Of a stretch of 64,000 nt of DNA, positions 25,761 through 31,800 are shown in pieces. This stretch comes from Vitrella brassicaformis CCMP3155 (taxonomy: Eukaryota > Protista > Chromerida). How positions within the stretch are numbered: the stretch's first letter is position 1; every line of letters starts with the position of its first letter. The stretch is taken from positions 1 to 64,000 of the forward strand of contig CDMY01000282.1 in assembly GCA_001179505.1 (NCBI GenBank), read 5' to 3'. Position numbers and translations under genes: made by a program. The notes under the pieces were generated by a model. It was not told the origin of the DNA. It ran no database searches and worked only from the letters and a program-made list of their open reading frames with translations.

Positions 25761-26226
25761 GCGGAATTGTGGAAGAATGAGGTACTACGGTAAAGAAGGT
25801 GCTATGTGGGGGGAAAATCTATGTCCATGTCTTGTCAGTGGGGTCTGGGGACGATCGCGCTCAGCAAGAAAGAAGAGAAGAAAGCTCGGGGGCTTTTGCA
25901 GGTGCCCGCCAGTGGCCATGTTGGACGGGCGAAAGCAGAGAAGTGGAAGACAAAGGTACGCCAACACGGTCATTGCAAATCATTGCAACAATGTCGCAAT
26001 GACTCCCTCGTCGCAGTTATGGGGCTTCGTCCAGGGTCAGCTTGAGACCATCGTGGCGAATCGGACACAAATGAAGTTGAATGTAAGTGCAAGCAAACGG
26101 CTGGTTGGTCGCGCAATGGGTGATTTGTCGTGTGCGTGTCCTCAGATGCTACTCGAGAGAGTCAAGGAGGGTGCTCTGCGAGAGACATTCCGGCAGCTTC
26201 GCGATATACGACTTCAGAATATATGA
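25761..26226 (+). CDS. Possible small spliced hypothetical ORF, antisense to neighbouring genes
   Basis: Good splice sites (AAAG/gtacgc, tcgcag/TT, GAAT/gtaagt, cctcag/ATG) join WGLGTIALSKKEEKKARG...KWKTK-LWGFVQGQLETIVANRTQMKLN-MLLERVKEGALRETFRQLRDIRLQNI* in frame. No start codon or family identified. Confidence 0.3.
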
Positions 26227-28752
26227 CATGAATCCGTACAAGTGGAGAGACACTCCCGCCAGCAGCGAGTCGAGGCTGATATCGGGACACTTGCCAGACA
26301 CACCCACACCATGGCTGCTGATGTGAGGCAGGTGAGACCTCTCGAATGAGTAGGTGCACACGCCTCCGGGCCCTTCGCGCAGCTGACATTGCCCAGGCAA
26401 GCAACATCTGGGCTCACTCTGTATGTTGGCAGGTCCTGGCTGCGTGAGTGAGTACTTCTATGTGTCCTTGTTGGCGTAGTAGAGACGCCTCAATTGTCGA
26501 GGGCAGGTCCTGTTGGCTCCCTTTCAGAGCTTTTCCCACCTCAGCGTACCTGGAAGACGGGACAGCCACACTCTGGCTCCTTCATCCTCTCCCCTACTTC
26601 TGACGAACCTACCATTTCTCCCTCAGCACAGTGAGTGTGGTCAGTTTGCCGAAGGAATCGGAGCTCATTATGGCATGGTGCACCTTTATCTGACCAAAAC
26701 AATTCAGTGATAATCAAATCGATAACACGACACGCAAGACATGTATGTATGCAGCCTGTACATACCCTTTTCAATGGCTTTTGGAGCGCGTCCGGCCCCG
26801 ATGCGACGACATCAGGGGGCATTGTGGCCCAGCTGATGTTCACACTCGGGTCGCTCAGCAGCACCCACAACACAGTGGACCGAAAGCGGCCGTGCGGGAG
26901 AGCCAGCATGAGGTCGCGGACATGTTGCCAGAAGTGGAGTGAGCGGCTGTTGCACCTCATGGCGAAGAAGCCCGTGTTGATCGGCCCGCCCCCGCCCGCT
27001 TGGAAACATATGTCGTTGCTGCTGAGGCAGGCGGACACCGCCTTAGCCCAGCCTGGGAAAAACTGCATGTCAGTGCATGACATGAATGCGGAGGAGACAT
27101 AATAGACAGCCAGCGGAAACCAGCACCGACCCAAGAGGTCCTTACTCACTCAGTCCCTCACCTGCAGGTCGATGTCGCTACAGACGACGGCGACGTCTGA
27201 CTCACTCTCCTCCTCCCCAGCCATCATGTTGTCTCGCACCACGTCGACCCAGTACTGCGCTTGCTGGTGAATGGCGTTGTACCACCCCGGCGACCGGTAT
27301 GTGGCTGCACCACTGTTGTCGATCAGCTTGGCGTGCACGGGCCGAGACACATTGCTGCCTTTCGGCATGATGGAAGACACAAAACCTGAAAAACAGGAGA
27401 GAGAGGACAGGTCAGTGGATGGCGTCGTTGTGCATGTCTCAACTGTCGTGCTTCCCTTACGCACTTGTCCGGACGAACTGTTGAAACACTTGGCCAAACC
27501 TGCAGCCAGCCGGCACACAGTAAATGAATGGCATGGATCGGACACGTGAGCCGTGTGTCTGTCCATTCTATCTATTCACTTACTTTGTGTCGTTCTGCAG
27601 CGAGAAGACGCTGTACACAGCACGGATGGGTGGCGGCGTGTCTCGCTGCAGAACGACGGGAGACACGGCCTTCATCCGGAAGTCCTCAACCCTCATCCCA
27701 GGCCTCTCCCAGCCTCCTTTGGCCACCAGAGCATGGGATGCGCCACGTCGCAACAGCCAGCATGCATCGTCTCTCAGCTTCCGCACATTTGCCGTCTTGT
27801 CGAGGGACCCCAGCATCAACTCATTCATGTGGTGACGGAGATACCAAGTGGGATAGAACTGACTCTCGACACTTACGCACTCCTACTGGACCAACACGCT
27901 CAGAGCCCCCCGTACCGTACCAATGTCTCGTTGTTGTCTATGTGTGTGCAGTGTACAGTACACTGACTGACCTTTGAGCCTGAGATAGCCTCCACAACAC
28001 GAAAACTCGCCTGAACACGGAAGTCCCTCGGGAACTGCCGCCGCACAGCCGCCTTGTCGTAGAAGCCGAGGCGAACCAGATTGCCCCTCACTGGTCCATA
28101 GAGGAAGAAGCCGGGGTAGAGAACAGACTCGAAGGACACATAGCCCGGCACACCGCTGAGCGCCTCCCTCTGGTGGAAGGAGCAGTGGATGGACTGCTGC
28201 AGCAGCTGGTCACCGAGCAGTGGATGCACGCTGCTGTGTTTGTCCAGGAGGGGTCTGAGGAGTTGCGAGTCGACGAGGAGGACGAAGTCGCTGAGCCTCG
28301 GGCTGAAATGGAAGAGGCAGTGAGCCCTGTCCGACTCGCGCGACCTGCGTCAACACATTCATCACCACAACATGCACACAGACCGCTCGCCCGCCCGCCC
28401 GTGATAGAGTGACGGATGAAGGATGAACCGTGACACCCGTCTTCGGTTGCGGATAGAGCAAGGCTCACCGTGACGGGCCCACGTAGTTGCCGGCCGGCTG
28501 GAAGGTCACCCACCCATCTGCGCCATCGATTGCGGCGGGGTGGGTATTGACATTGTCCCCTGCAGTGCCAGCCATCGAGCCGGTCGCGTTAGGGGGTGTT
28601 GAGGAAGAGGCCTCATTGTCAGGGTGCGGATCTGATTCCAGCAGGAACCTCTGGAGAAACAGCCGGAGAAGCATTATGTTGCCGACCACGACCAGGCTTG
28701 TCAGCGAGAGCAGGAAACCTGCAACAAGAGCCCGAATCTTGCGCTGCTCCAT
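26149..28752 (-). CDS. Type II membrane protein: AbfB/CBM42-like beta-trefoil fused to a nucleotide-diphospho-sugar transferase (GT77-like); 3' end approximate (26149 or about 26415)
   Basis: N-terminal signal anchor IRALVAGFLLSLTSLVVVGNIMLLRLF. AbfB repeats GYVSFESVLYPGFFLY...ASFRVVEAISG and ECVSVESQFYPTWYLRHHMNELML...DDACW. In-frame splicing (NDTK/FGQV...VRTS/FVSS) into YRSPGWYNAIHQQ, VVCSDIDLQFF (DxD), INTGFFAMRCNSRSLHFW and IKVHHA. Confidence 0.75.
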
Positions 28753-28828
28753 TCTCTTCTTTTTGAGACTGAGTGAATTAAGCTCGGTGAGACGCCCCAC
28801 TTAGCCCCCCTCTAAATCGAGAAGCATG

Positions 28829-31800
28829 TCACTTGGCCCAGTAATATTTCCCGACCATACCCTGCGGCACTGTCAGGATGCTGCCGCCCTTGCTGTCTGT
28901 GTCAGCCCCCTTTCTCCCCAGCAGCCCCCTCATCTCCTCACGCACCGCCCCCGTCACACCAGGCACGACACAGCCAATCATCGCCCCCCTCTCTGGCGGC
29001 CTCGCACAGGCGGACCAATGCTGGCCGGTGCGTGGCATGTACTTGAACACTTCCTCCGACCAGACGGGATTGCTCCAGAACTGCTGCTTGACGTCCTGGG
29101 CGAAGCGAACGGGCCTGCCTTTCTGCGCGGCCTTGCGGTAGTGCGTCATCAGGTGCCTTGAACGGATGTGCGCACACAGATACACCGACAGGGCGCCGGC
29201 ATAGTGATCGCTGATGCACACATGCACAGGGACGGAGGGAGGGAGAGAGACAGGGAGAGAGAGGCGATGCGCATCGAAACAGGCGGCAGACTTGGTTATC
29301 ATTGGTGCAGGGCTTACTGGAGTCCGATGATCTGGAAGAAGTTGTGAGTCCCGATGTGCCACTTGTCGGGAAGCCGGGCGGGGCAGCATTGCTGGAACAC
29401 GCTGCGGACGCGGCGGATGAACTCATCCTCGCTGCACCTGCACACAGTACAGTGCGCACCACAACACCTCTCGCACGTATGCATGCGCCCGTAAGCAGCC
29501 CTATCTACTGTCGGTCGTCAGTAGATACCTACTTACTTGTCGGGGTCCATGTCTGGTCCGTGGATGTAGTGGTCGACGATAGAGTACTGCAGGATGGACA
29601 GCCGCTCATGGACGCTGTACGGCACACGCCTACACCCATATTGACACACACCAACATAGAGAGCCATCAATCACCATGATGCTTACGGTGCGTTGGGTGG
29701 CTGGCTGGCTCCATGTACCTACCTGACCAGGTCTTCAGTCATCCTGGCGCCTGTCTCGAGGTGCTGCGCCAGCTCGTCTAACACGCGAGGCTCGCGGACC
29801 AAATGCCTGCGCACACACACACACACACACACGGTTGATCGTCCTCTGTGCTACCTACGTCCGTGTGACCCTTCCCTCACTCTTGCATGACGGCAGCAGT
29901 TTCGATGAGGTCCAGCGGGACAACTTGGGGCGCACGAAGCACACTAAGGATGCCAGCAACATCACCCTGATAGACACAGCACGGCACAGGCAGACATGAA
30001 ACCACACAGTCCGTCCGTCCGTCCGTCGGTCACCTCGTCGGCCCCGAGGGCATCGAATGGACGTCCATTTAAGGGCGTGTGGGGCATGACAGCGGGTTGC
30101 TGCCCCTGCCTGAGCCTTTGCTGCATGGCCTTCATCAGAAACAGGAAGTGCAGACAGTGGCCGAACTCATGCGCCACCTTATCCGATACCTGCATCCACG
30201 GGACACACCAACACAACACACCAACACAGGGATGCGCACATGGATGGTGACACCGGTTGCCTGCCCATTCTGTCTGTTGCTGACTGACTGACCGACCGCA
30301 TGGAAGGGCACTGGCATGGACATAGGTCCCGGCTCGACAGGCGTCTCCACCATGAGCCTCACATGCCCCAGCCCCACCACGTGGCACCCCGCCCCGCCAC
30401 TCCGCTCATCGGCCATGATATCCACATACACGTAGCCCAAGTGGGGGTCGTCATCACTGCCACCTCGGCGGTCCCGGTCCTTCACCGCGTAGATGGCCAC
30501 CTGCTGCGGCCAGCCGTAGTTGTGCCTCGCTGCCGGCACGCGCTCGATGTCGACCTGATAGACGGACTCAAAGATGGCGCGGAGGCGGTCGAAGTAGGTG
30601 TCGTGGGCGAAGTACTGTGCCAGCTCGTGAGTGGTGTCTAGGTGAGAATCCTGATATCAGTGAAGAGAGAGGAAGGAAGGACGCGATCGAGTGAGTGTTG
30701 TTGGTGTCGATCCTCCCCCGCCCAGCCCAGCCCAGCCCACCTTTGCAGCGAAGTGAATCCAATCGTGGAGTTCCATCCGCTGCCCCTTGTCCCCCTTCCC
30801 CTTCCCCTTCCCCCCGCCTGCACCGAGCTCTCGCCTTGCCCTCTCCTCCACCGCCTTGACATGCGGCTGCGCGGCTCTCCACAGCTCCTGATGCAGCGCG
30901 CCAATGCTCTCAGGGGTCTCCACCGTCAGCTTTGCCAGGCTGTAGTCGCGCCAACAAGAGAATCCCAACTCTTTTGCCATGGCTCTGCGGCTCCTGAGGA
31001 CTGCCAGAGTGGCCGCCGCCTCTTCCTTCGGGTCAACCATCTCCAGCATGGCAGTCAGGAGCTTGGCGCGGGTCTCACTGTCACTCACATGCGCCAGGTG
31101 GAACTCGATCTCTTGCCGGGCCACTGGCGCCCTCAACACGTCGGGGTTCCTCACTGAGACGTAAGAGGCCTTCCAGGCATCATCGGCAACATAGTGCGCT
31201 GCAGGAATGTCCACCGCCGCGTTGCCGCAGGCTTTCCTCTCCTGAGCCGCGAGCATCGCCGCCGCCTCATTATGGACGGACAAGAGAGCCGCGGTGCCCT
31301 TGTTGCCCACAGAGAGGAACAAAGCCTCGTTAGCCGTCACAGAGGGGCACCGACTGATGGCCCTCATCACTTCCGCCCTTCTGTCTTTCTCTTGGTTCCG
31401 CGATTGCTCGCTGTCCTTCGAATGGTCCGTGTGGATGGCCTCGACCGAGTCATGGACGAGGCATTCGCACCAGCCAGCCGCTCTAGAGTAGAAACGGCGG
31501 CGCATCGAAGAGCTCGTCATGATATCCAAGCTCTCGAGCGCCGACCACAGGACCGCTGCACGGTTGCACGCACTCTGCAGCCCCGGCAACGTCGACGGGC
31601 TCTGCAGGTACCGGCTGACTAGACGCGCAACATGCCTCTCCTCCCCAGTCGCTTTGTCCTCGGTCAGCTCGCCTTTCGCCTTCATCGCCACCGCTGCCGA
31701 GTGCGTGTCGACCAGCCGCGTGAAGCGCCTCATCAGATCTCTGCGTGCGGCGTTGCACGCCCACCGAGAGAACGCCATCAGGCTGAGCGGCCCCGAAGGA

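What the first reader, a model, noticed from the sequence alone, without database searches (positions are those of the whole stretch)
26149..28752. Arabinose-binding AbfB/CBM42 beta-trefoil fused to a GT77-like glycosyltransferase: candidate reader-writer arabinosylation enzyme
Seen: one spliced reading frame links a signal anchor, two clear AbfB-type repeats (VSFESVLYPGFFLY at about 28100-28140; VSVESQFYPTWYLRH at about 27832-27877, each followed by an F/W-ending strand) and a GT-A fold with DxD (SDID, 27168-27179) and INTGFFAMR. Known: CBM42/AbfB binds L-arabinofuranosides and normally accompanies hydrolases (GH54, GH43, GH127/DUF1680). PF03407/GT77 includes the plant RRA and XEG113 arabinofuranosyltransferases that extend Hyp-arabinosides. 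Inference: a Golgi transferase that recognises existing Araf and elongates it. I know of no description of this architecture, and it would imply arabinosylated wall/cyst glycoproteins in an alveolate.
Basis: partly seen in the sequence, partly recalled or inferred. Interest (0 to 1): 0.8.

Follow-up and report, generated by a model that had tools for sequence, protein, structure and literature searches.

The report
Trefoil lectin fused to glycosyltransferase
One gene of the alga Vitrella brassicaformis encodes a membrane-anchored enzyme in which an arabinofuranosidase-type (CBM42-like) sugar-binding trefoil sits in front of a divergent GT77-like glycosyltransferase; the domain combination is real and I found no description of it, but nothing shows that it reads or writes arabinose.

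Summary
On the minus strand, eight RNA-supported exons (28752-26414) give a roughly 574-aa type II membrane protein. It has a signal anchor, an AbfB/CBM42-like trefoil and a GT-A glycosyltransferase with DxD (SDID), NTGFF and HH motifs.

- **Trefoil:** Pfam AbfB scores 35.5 bits (cut-off 22.8) on the public model.
- **Fusion:** one exon (E3) encodes both the last trefoil repeat and the first strand of the GT fold. One 1312-nt cDNA contig also spans both halves.
- **Transferase:** it misses Pfam PF03407's threshold but is a clear remote member. hhalign gives 100% probability. AF2 gives pLDDT 90.5, and the nearest Atlas fold is a PF03407 cluster.
- **Relatives:** two paralogues in the same genome have the same architecture. 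One was probably noted earlier by the scan on other DNA (s1-248803). An apicomplexan (Rhytidocystis) transcriptome holds further homologues.

The arabinose reader-writer reading is not supported:
- No UDP-arabinose mutase (RGP) or UDP-galactopyranose mutase was found in the genome.
- Only one trefoil pocket keeps the His and Asp, and the paralogues lose them.
- GT77 enzymes transfer several different sugars.

Caveats:
- The only cDNA contig uses a CAG acceptor that puts a TAG in frame. The full-length frame needs the TAG acceptor 3 nt downstream.
- The public model wrongly merges the upstream M3 peptidase gene.

The parts
28469..28752 (-). Exon 1: ATG 28752, a short basic tail (MEQRKIR), a hydrophobic signal anchor of about 24 aa (about 28731-28654), an NAT sequon and the first trefoil-like strand (GWVTFQPAGNYV)
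   Evidence: Frame and translation. Intron 1 joint in X5. The topology is inferred from the sequence.
27972..28344 (-). Exon 2: the end of the first trefoil unit and the middle AbfB-type repeat (GYVSFESVLYPGFFLYG...QASFRVVEAISG). The pocket His and Asp are replaced here (YG, Q).
   Evidence: The AbfB hit on P0002 residues 967-1080 maps to 28184-27754. Residue-level PDB alignments.
27883..27885 (-). In-frame TAG between tandem acceptors (CAG|TAG|GAG). It is included in the only cDNA contig and excluded in the public model.
   Evidence: Joint 27885/27972 in X5 record 14, ambiguity of 2 nt at most. Phase arithmetic. P0002 reads ISGSK|ECVSV.
27584..27882 (-). Exon 3: the last AbfB repeat (ECVSVESQFYPTWYLRHH...RDDACW; His at 27834-27832, Asp at 27768-27766), a linker, and the first strand of the GT-A fold (IRAVYSVF, from about 27627). 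The fusion point lies inside this single exon.
   Evidence: Pfam AbfB 22.5 bits on this exon alone and 23.7 bits in the genome scan. PDB CBM42 matches. In the AF2 model, strand 14-21 of P0002:1110-1348 has block pLDDT 94.
27465..27499 (-). Exon 4: a 35-nt micro-exon (FGQVFQQFVRT), part of the first helix of the GT-A fold
   Evidence: Two joints in X5 record 14. Present in P0002.
27162..27385 (-). Exon 5: GT-A strand 2, a long helix and the DxD motif (SDID 27179-27168)
   Evidence: D110 and D112 are invariant in the 100-sequence alignment A3.
26766..27062 (-). Exon 6: the GT core (FFPGW...NDICFQ...PINTGFFAMRC...FW..VRD...GRF). INTGFFAMR lies at 26981-26955.
   Evidence: Paralogue matches.
26613..26689 (-). 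Exon 7: the VHHA motif (His-His 26680-26675) and a conserved Lys (26647-26645). This is probably the C-terminal metal and nucleotide-sugar contact of the GT-A fold.
   Evidence: H218, A219 and K228 are nearly invariant in A3. The function of these residues is inferred.
26414..26549 (-). Exon 8: the last 44 codons and stop TGA 26416-26414. It is missing from the public model, which retains intron 7 and ends at ...REKW.
   Evidence: Joint 26546/26610 in X5. Phases. End of P0002.

Best explanation
This is one gene of Vitrella brassicaformis. It encodes a roughly 574-aa type II membrane protein of the secretory pathway. The order of parts is a short cytoplasmic tail, a signal anchor, a luminal CBM42/AbfB-like beta-trefoil, a short linker, and a GT-A glycosyltransferase domain.

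The transferase belongs to a divergent branch of the PF03407 (Nucleotid_trans, GT77-like) superfamily. It keeps every invariant residue of that branch: DxD, D..CFQ, NTGFF and HHA..K. It is therefore probably an active, metal-dependent, probably retaining transferase.

Inferred mechanism: the trefoil acts as a lectin or acceptor-holding module. It would keep the catalytic domain on a glycan or glycoprotein substrate, as the ricin-type lectin domain does in polypeptide GalNAc-transferases. At most one pocket, in the last repeat, still looks sugar-competent.

The sugars read and transferred are unknown. L-arabinofuranose is unlikely, because no known route to a furanose donor was found in the genome.

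Shown: gene structure, fusion, domain families, fold, paralogues. Inferred: topology, activity, lectin role.
For: Fusion:
- X5 cDNA contig record 14 (1312 nt) joins 28345 to 26610 across six introns.
- Exon E3 alone encodes the last AbfB repeat and GT strand 1.
- In the paralogues, the trefoil repeats and the GT N-terminus lie in one uninterrupted open frame (L012 1-1266, L010 711-1301).

Trefoil:
- PF05270 scores 35.5 bits, E 1.3e-8.
- The only PDB sequence matches are CBM42 modules.
- The nearest language-model clusters are AbfB, at 0.94.

Transferase:
- The profile of the three paralogues' core found 285 proteins at E <= 1e-3.
- 95 of 100 aligned hits carry PF03407.
- hhalign of the family against PF03407-positive proteins gives probability 100%, E 1.4e-39.
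- AF2 gives pLDDT 90.5 and pTM 0.89.
- The top Foldseek PDB matches are retaining GT-A enzymes: glycogenin, PBCV-1 A64R and alpha-1,3-GalT/GTB.
- The nearest Atlas model is a PF03407 cluster, TM 0.72 with 199 residues aligned.
- The invariant D110, D112 and G145 and the near-invariant F115, D131, Q135, F146, H218, A219 and K228 are all present.

Family:
- Paralogues P0001 and P0003 in the same genome and homologues P0005/P0010 in Rhytidocystis pertsovi.
- The similarity of P0005 extends into the first trefoil unit (E 3e-6).

Against arabinose: no RGP and no GLF match.
Against: - The only cDNA contig over the E2/E3 junction carries an in-frame TAG. The abundant mRNA form may therefore encode only 219 aa.
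- The window protein itself gets no PF03407 hit at E <= 1, and the paralogues reach only 15-16 bits against a cut-off of 22.
- The trefoil fold could not be modelled (pLDDT 31.7 with 4 sequences).
- Two of three pockets lack the binding residues, and the paralogues lack them in the last repeat too, so lectin activity is uncertain.
- Localisation, donor and acceptor are untested.
- Contigs cannot show transcript ends or isoform ratios.
Confidence: 0.65

Rival explanations
1. This is a Golgi arabinofuranosyltransferase that binds existing L-Araf through the CBM42 trefoil and elongates it with UDP-Araf, implying arabinosylated wall or cyst glycoproteins.
For: - The trefoil is of the CBM42 type, and the characterised CBM42 modules I read about or recall bind Araf.
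- The last repeat keeps the pocket His (YLRHH) and Asp (RDDACW).
- From established knowledge, PF03407/GT77 includes the plant RRA and XEG113 enzymes.
- A UDP-glucose/GDP-mannose dehydrogenase-family gene is present, so the UDP-GlcA to UDP-Xyl route towards pentoses is conceivable.
Against: - No match to RGP/UDP-Ara mutase PF03214 anywhere in the 72.7-Mb genome.
- No UDP-Galp mutase either.
- The pocket Tyr is not conserved and the other pockets are degenerate. The paralogues lose the His or the Asp.
- The GT domain is closest to about 230-aa metagenomic PF03407 proteins (nearest Atlas cluster 91% bacterial). Plant GT77 members were not compared directly.
- GT77 sugar specificity is mixed.
Confidence: 0.1
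2. The trefoil is a degenerate CBM42 relic that no longer binds sugar. It serves as a stem, spacer, oligomerisation or protein-recognition module for an otherwise ordinary Golgi transferase.
For: - The binding residues are missing in two of three repeats here and in the last repeat of both paralogues.
- The trefoil regions of the paralogues are so diverged that word search and exon search do not connect them.
- The Rhytidocystis homologue has long low-complexity insertions and no Pfam AbfB hit.
Against: - The last repeat of the window protein keeps His and Asp at the CBM42 positions.
- The module has been kept in three paralogues and, at least in part, in an apicomplexan.
- One working pocket is enough in some CBM42 and CBM13 modules (PMC12493170).
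Confidence: 0.2
3. At this locus the fused protein is rarely or never made. The main mRNA includes the TAG at the E2/E3 junction and yields a 219-aa truncated product or is degraded (unproductive splicing or incipient pseudogene). Function would then rest with the paralogues.
For: - The only cDNA contig across the junction uses the proximal CAG acceptor, with shift ambiguity of 2 nt at most.
- Logan contigs keep the commoner variant.
- An unspliced contig also crosses intron 1.
Against: - Downstream of the TAG all seven remaining exons stay open and in phase.
- Every invariant catalytic residue is kept.
- Tandem NAGNAG acceptors commonly give both forms (general knowledge).
- Contigs cannot give isoform ratios.
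Confidence: 0.1
4. The public gene model is right, and the protein is a 1348-aa triple fusion of M3 peptidase, trefoil and glycosyltransferase.
For: The public model CEL99502.1 / A0A0G4EQ25 (P0002) joins ...TVPQG to FLLSLTS.
Against: - X5 contigs run collinear with the genome across both ends of the proposed intron (28771-29210 and 28467-28787). No such joint is listed.
- The M3 frame has its own stop at 28831-28829.
- The proposed splice would delete the ATG and half of the signal anchor, which both paralogues have at their own N-termini.
- Contig word depths differ about ninefold (117.5 against 13.3). The tool warns that such depths are a poor measure, so this is only suggestive.
Confidence: 0.03

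Closest known systems
CBM42 / AbfB domain (PF05270) of GH54 and GH43_26 alpha-L-arabinofuranosidases and of the RsgI5 sensor (PDB 1WD3, 3AKF, 3KMV, 9NXI, 9FNK)
   Same: It has the repeat signature VS.ES..YP..YLRH ... DA.F. Pfam scores it over threshold on the whole protein. All PDB sequence matches are CBM42 modules. His and Asp of one pocket are conserved.
   Different: It is attached to a transferase, not a hydrolase or sensor. It lies in a eukaryotic membrane protein's luminal stem. Two pockets are degenerate and the pocket Tyr is absent. There is an extra N-terminal repeat-like unit. The fold was not confirmed by a model.
PF03407 Nucleotid_trans / CAZy GT77 (plant RGXT, RRA, XEG113; Dictyostelium AgtA)
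   Same: It has a GT-A fold and a DxD followed by F.P. It shares the N.GF motif and the C-terminal HH..K. It is a type II membrane protein. hhalign gives probability 100% against PF03407-positive proteins, and the nearest Atlas fold is a PF03407 cluster.
   Different: It falls below Pfam's gathering score. It forms a small separate branch seen in Vitrella, Rhytidocystis and a few transcriptome or metagenome proteins. It has an N-terminal trefoil. Donor and acceptor are unknown. CAZy and dbCAN assignment was not run.
Polypeptide GalNAc-transferases (GT27 catalytic domain plus C-terminal ricin-type CBM13 lectin)
   Same: It has the same logic: a Golgi type II GT-A enzyme carries a beta-trefoil lectin that can hold it on already glycosylated substrate (a reader-writer).
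   Different: The catalytic and lectin families differ. The lectin is N-terminal here and C-terminal there. There is no evidence here that the lectin reads the enzyme's own product.
Stand-alone PF03407 proteins of about 230 aa from metagenomes, and multi-domain relatives (the Atlas's nearest PF03407 clusters are mostly bacterial or viral)
   Same: They are the closest sequence relatives of the catalytic domain outside the family (E 1e-9 to 1e-13). They share the same invariant residues.
   Different: They have no trefoil and mostly no membrane anchor. Their partners, where present, are other GT, methyltransferase or radical-SAM domains.

Membership tests
CBM42 / AbfB (PF05270) | Match to the Pfam model at or above the gathering score (22.8 bits) | tested here: met
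   The score is 35.5 bits, E 1.3e-8, on P0002 residues 967-1080. Exon E3 alone gives 22.5 bits and 23.7 bits. Paralogue P0001 gives 21.7-22.8 bits.
CBM42 / AbfB (PF05270) | Beta-trefoil fold of three subdomains | tested here: inconclusive
   AF2 with a 4-sequence alignment gave pLDDT 31.7. The nearest language-model clusters are AbfB and then ricin-type trefoils. Internal repeats are not significant by BLASTP.
CBM42 / AbfB (PF05270) | [quoted passage not shown] | tested here: inconclusive
The last repeat keeps His (YLRHH) and Asp (RDDACW) but not the Tyr. The middle repeat has YG and Q. The first repeat has neither.
CBM42 / AbfB (PF05270) | Binding of alpha-L-arabinofuranosyl residues | not testable with these tools
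   This needs ITC or a glycan array on the recombinant module.
PF03407 Nucleotid_trans / GT77 | Match to the Pfam model at or above the gathering score (22 bits) | tested here: not met
   There is no hit at E <= 1 on P0002 or at E <= 10 on the exons. The genome scan lists seven other PF03407 loci but not this one. The paralogues score 15.0-15.8 bits.
PF03407 Nucleotid_trans / GT77 | Homology to family members by profile methods | tested here: met
   The profile search found 285 hits. 95 of 100 carry PF03407, best E 1.9e-18. hhalign gives probability 100%, E 1.4e-39, over 193 columns.
PF03407 Nucleotid_trans / GT77 | GT-A fold with a DxD metal site | tested here: met
   AF2 gives pLDDT 90.5. 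Foldseek matches retaining GT-A enzymes at E 3e-6 to 3e-5. The best Atlas match is a PF03407 cluster at TM 0.72. The DxD is invariant.
PF03407 Nucleotid_trans / GT77 | CAZy GT77 assignment (dbCAN model) and position relative to the RRA/XEG113, RGXT and AgtA clades | not tested
Hyp-arabinoside arabinofuranosyltransferases (RRA/XEG113-like function) | Availability of the donor UDP-L-Araf (UDP-arabinopyranose mutase, RGP, PF03214) | tested here: not met
   The six-frame genome scan found no match at E <= 1. The control genome Haloferax matched, so the scan can detect the family.
Lectin-bearing Golgi glycosyltransferases (GalNAc-T type reader-writer) | A GT-A catalytic domain and a beta-trefoil lectin in one luminal polypeptide behind a signal anchor | tested here: met
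   The resemblance is of design only, because the families (GT27, CBM13) differ.

The most novel reading that the evidence does not exclude
The family is a true furanoside reader-writer. The surviving CBM42 pocket would bind an Araf- or Galf-like residue on a wall or cyst glycan. The GT77-like domain would add the next such residue, using a donor made by a route unrelated to the known RGP and GLF mutases. That would reveal an undescribed glycan shared by chromerids and early-branching apicomplexans such as Rhytidocystis.
Probability: 0.08. Interest if true: 0.75.

Novelty: new variant of a known kind. Interest (0 to 1): 0.45.

Why it matters
- **New context for CBM42:** it puts a CBM42-type module, known to me only beside glycoside hydrolases and one bacterial sensor, on a biosynthetic enzyme.
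- **Parallel to GalNAc-transferases:** it gives the GT77-like superfamily a lectin-bearing branch comparable to the GalNAc-transferases.
- **Lineage:** the family occurs in a free-living photosynthetic relative of apicomplexans and in an early-branching apicomplexan. It may therefore mark a wall or cyst glycan pathway of that lineage, whose wall chemistry is little known.
- **Annotation:** the public model of this gene merges it with an M3 peptidase, drops its start codon and signal anchor, and misses its last exon.
- **Limits:** the enzyme's sugars are unknown, and the specific arabinose story has evidence against it. The value for now is a well-defined candidate, not a pathway.

Tried and rejected
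- **Exon-by-exon Pfam:** it gave only the borderline AbfB hit on E3 and nothing for the GT exons.
- **Word searches:** searches of the GT exon and of the trefoil region of P0002:830-1348 found nothing. Length limits and divergence make these blanks uninformative.
- **Trefoil paralogues:** a genome search with exon E2 found no paralogue, because the trefoils are too diverged.
- **Trefoil alignment and model:** MAFFT of the trefoil regions is unreliable. AF2 on it failed (pLDDT 31.7), so no fold search was run on that model.
- **Internal repeats:** BLASTP of E2 against E3 shows no significant internal repeat.
- **Literature:** searches for CBM42 with glycosyltransferase, GT77 with Vitrella and GT77 with beta-trefoil gave no description of the architecture.
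- **M3 merger rejected:** the public model's merger with the M3 peptidase was considered and rejected (see rivals).
- **More 3' exons rejected:** No minus-strand joint lies below 26546. The joint at 26331/26432 is GT..AG on the plus strand only and belongs to a convergent transcript.
- **Joined model left out:** I did not build or search my own joined 574-aa exon model. I used the public protein P0002, which is identical from residue 13 of my model to the end of exon 7.
Full report
**Where and what**

The window is contig C282 of a 72.7-Mb, 1064-contig genome. Exact look-up of the encoded proteins identifies it as Vitrella brassicaformis CCMP3155. The feature lies on the minus strand.

**Gene structure**

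Run X5 behaves as cDNA. Its contigs skip seven short stretches that resolve to GT..AG on the minus strand. The exons are:
- E1 28752-28469
- E2 28344-27972
- E3 27885 or 27882 to 27584
- E4 27499-27465
- E5 27385-27162
- E6 27062-26766
- E7 26689-26613
- E8 26549-26414

Phase arithmetic keeps one frame from ATG 28752 to TGA 26416-26414, about 574 aa. One contig of 1312 nt (record 14) runs from E2 to E7, so both halves sit on one RNA.

There is one caveat. That contig uses the CAG acceptor at 27886, which places TAG (27885-27883) in frame directly after E2. The open frame requires the tandem TAG acceptor 3 nt downstream. The public model uses that acceptor, but I have no read evidence for it. 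Contigs cannot give isoform ratios.

**The fusion is not a model artefact**

- Exon E3 by itself encodes the last AbfB repeat (ECVSVESQFYPTWYLRHH) and, 85 codons later, IRAVYSVF. In the confident AF2 model that segment is the first strand of the GT-A fold.
- Two paralogues found with the GT exons (C320 and C149) carry the trefoil-like repeats and the GT N-terminus in one uninterrupted open frame (L010 711-1301, L012 1-1266).
- Their public proteins, P0003 (484 aa) and P0001 (570 aa), begin with their own signal anchors.

**Public annotation**

The window gene's public protein is P0002 (CEL99502.1 / A0A0G4EQ25, 1348 aa). It joins the upstream Peptidase_M3 gene (PF01432, 70 bits) to residue 13 of this protein and ends at ...REKW by retaining intron 7. 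The evidence points to two genes:
- The X5 contigs are collinear with the genome across both ends of the proposed joining intron, and no such joint is listed.
- The M3 frame has its own stop at 28831-28829.
- The contig word depths differ about ninefold, which is only suggestive.

P0002:831-1348 is identical to my exon model for E1 (from residue 13) through E7. I therefore used it, by reference, wherever a contiguous protein was needed. I neither built nor searched a joined string of my own.

**Trefoil**

- Pfam AbfB (PF05270) scores 35.5 bits, E 1.3e-8, on P0002 967-1080 against profile positions 37-136, with a cut-off of 22.8.
- E3 alone is borderline at 22.5 and 23.7 bits.
- phmmer against PDB returns only CBM42 modules: RsgI5, SaAraf43A, C. 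thermocellum CBM42, A. kawachii AbfB and AtAbf43C. E values run from 1e-5 to 0.25.
- Language-model neighbours are AbfB clusters at 0.94, then ricin-type trefoils.
- AF2 with only four diverged sequences failed (pLDDT 31.7), so the fold itself is not shown.

In AtAbf43C each working CBM42 pocket uses His, Tyr and Asp (PMC12493170). In the residue-level alignments:
- The last repeat keeps His (YLRHH) and Asp (RDDACW, aligned to EDATF of AkAbfB) but not the Tyr.
- The middle repeat has YG and Q at those places.
- The paralogues lose the His (YIRYG in P0001) or the Asp (REAASF in P0003).

**Transferase**

No exon and no public model of this gene reaches PF03407. The paralogues reach 15-16 bits against a cut-off of 22. 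Remote membership is nevertheless clear:
- A profile of the GT core of the three paralogues (A1, rows by reference, exon by exon) was searched against 1.84 billion representatives. It found 285 proteins at E <= 1e-3.
- 95 of 100 aligned hits carry PF03407, best E 1.9e-18.
- hhalign of the family (A6) against 40 such proteins (A7) gives probability 100%, E 1.4e-39.
- The AF2 model of P0002:1110-1348 has pLDDT 90.5 and pTM 0.89.
- Foldseek finds retaining GT-A enzymes first: glycogenin, PBCV-1 A64R, alpha-1,3-GalT and GTB.
- The nearest Atlas model is a PF03407 cluster, TM 0.72 and rmsd 2.7 over 199 residues.
- All invariant and near-invariant columns of the 100-sequence alignment are kept in this protein: D-x-D, F, D..CFQ, N.GF, HHA and K. 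It is therefore probably active.

**Distribution**

- Strong hits (E < 1e-28) are only the three Vitrella proteins, a repeat-rich metagenomic protein matched in 28 short stretches (P0004), and a 1184-aa transcript product of the apicomplexan Rhytidocystis pertsovi (P0005). A second Rhytidocystis fragment is P0010.
- P0005 also matches the first trefoil unit of P0003 (E 3e-6), but it has no Pfam AbfB hit.
- P0006, from a 1.9-kb Logan contig (sample ERR6349594), has an anchor and the GT but no trefoil.
- A dinoflagellate (Polykrikos) protein is a weaker relative.
- AbfB is not among the 25 of 29 partner families listed for 30 long relatives. The listed partners include GT2, GT4, GT47, methyltransferase and radical-SAM domains.

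**Arabinose?**

- The genome gave no match to RGP/UDP-arabinopyranose mutase (PF03214) or to UDP-galactopyranose mutase (PF03275). The scan is exon-wise, but both families are well conserved.
- A UDP-glucose/GDP-mannose dehydrogenase-family gene exists.
- From established knowledge, GT77 contains xylosyl-, galactosyl- and arabinosyl-transferases.

**Mechanism proposed**

The enzyme is a type II Golgi or ER-lumen protein. This is inferred from the basic tail, the anchor of about 24 residues and four N-x-S/T sequons. Its GT-A domain would transfer a sugar from a nucleotide donor with a DxD/His-bound metal. The trefoil would hold the acceptor glycan or glycoprotein, as in the lectin-bearing GalNAc-transferases.

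**Verdict**

- The architecture is real, conserved in a small alveolate family, and apparently undescribed.
- It is a new variant of the known class of lectin-bearing glycosyltransferases.
- The arabinose reader-writer function is unsupported and partly contradicted.

Noticed in passing
window 28829-29400 and upstream, minus strand: An M3-family peptidase gene ends with its own stop at 28831-28829. Its cDNA contig (depth 117.5) reaches 28771, and the downstream gene's contig reaches up to 28787. The public model CEL99502.1 merges the two genes into one 1348-aa protein.
   Followed up: partly
window 25934-26457, plus strand: A spliced plus-strand transcript has GT..AG introns at 25954-26014, 26083-26145 and 26332-26432. 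It is seen in X1 and X5. It converges on and overlaps the 3' end of the transferase gene (last exon and 3' UTR) in antisense.
   Followed up: no
window 26201-26230: In all four runs a contig leaves the window sequence after 26230 (loose end CAGCCGATTCTACC...). This could be a second haplotype, a repeat copy or an assembly alternative at this point.
   Followed up: no
G000 C149:104.5-107.6 kb (L012) and C320:21.1-24.3 kb (L010): Two paralogues have the same anchor, trefoil and GT architecture (CEL93245.1, 570 aa; CEM02176.1, 484 aa). The public model of the C320 copy seems to skip part of the trefoil and the GT N-terminus that are open in the genome.
   Followed up: partly
G000 C254:71.7-83.3 kb (L002, L003, L005): Three canonical PF03407 genes (91-111 bits) lie within 12 kb of each other. 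Further copies lie on C647, C411 and C793. The genome thus has a sizeable GT77-like set although no RGP mutase was found.
   Followed up: no
P0004 (1913 aa) and P0008 (437 aa), metagenomic: Two proteins match only profile positions 68-92 (the NTGFFAMRC region), 28 and 13 times over. This is an odd tandem repetition of a GT-core motif or a compositional artefact.
   Followed up: no
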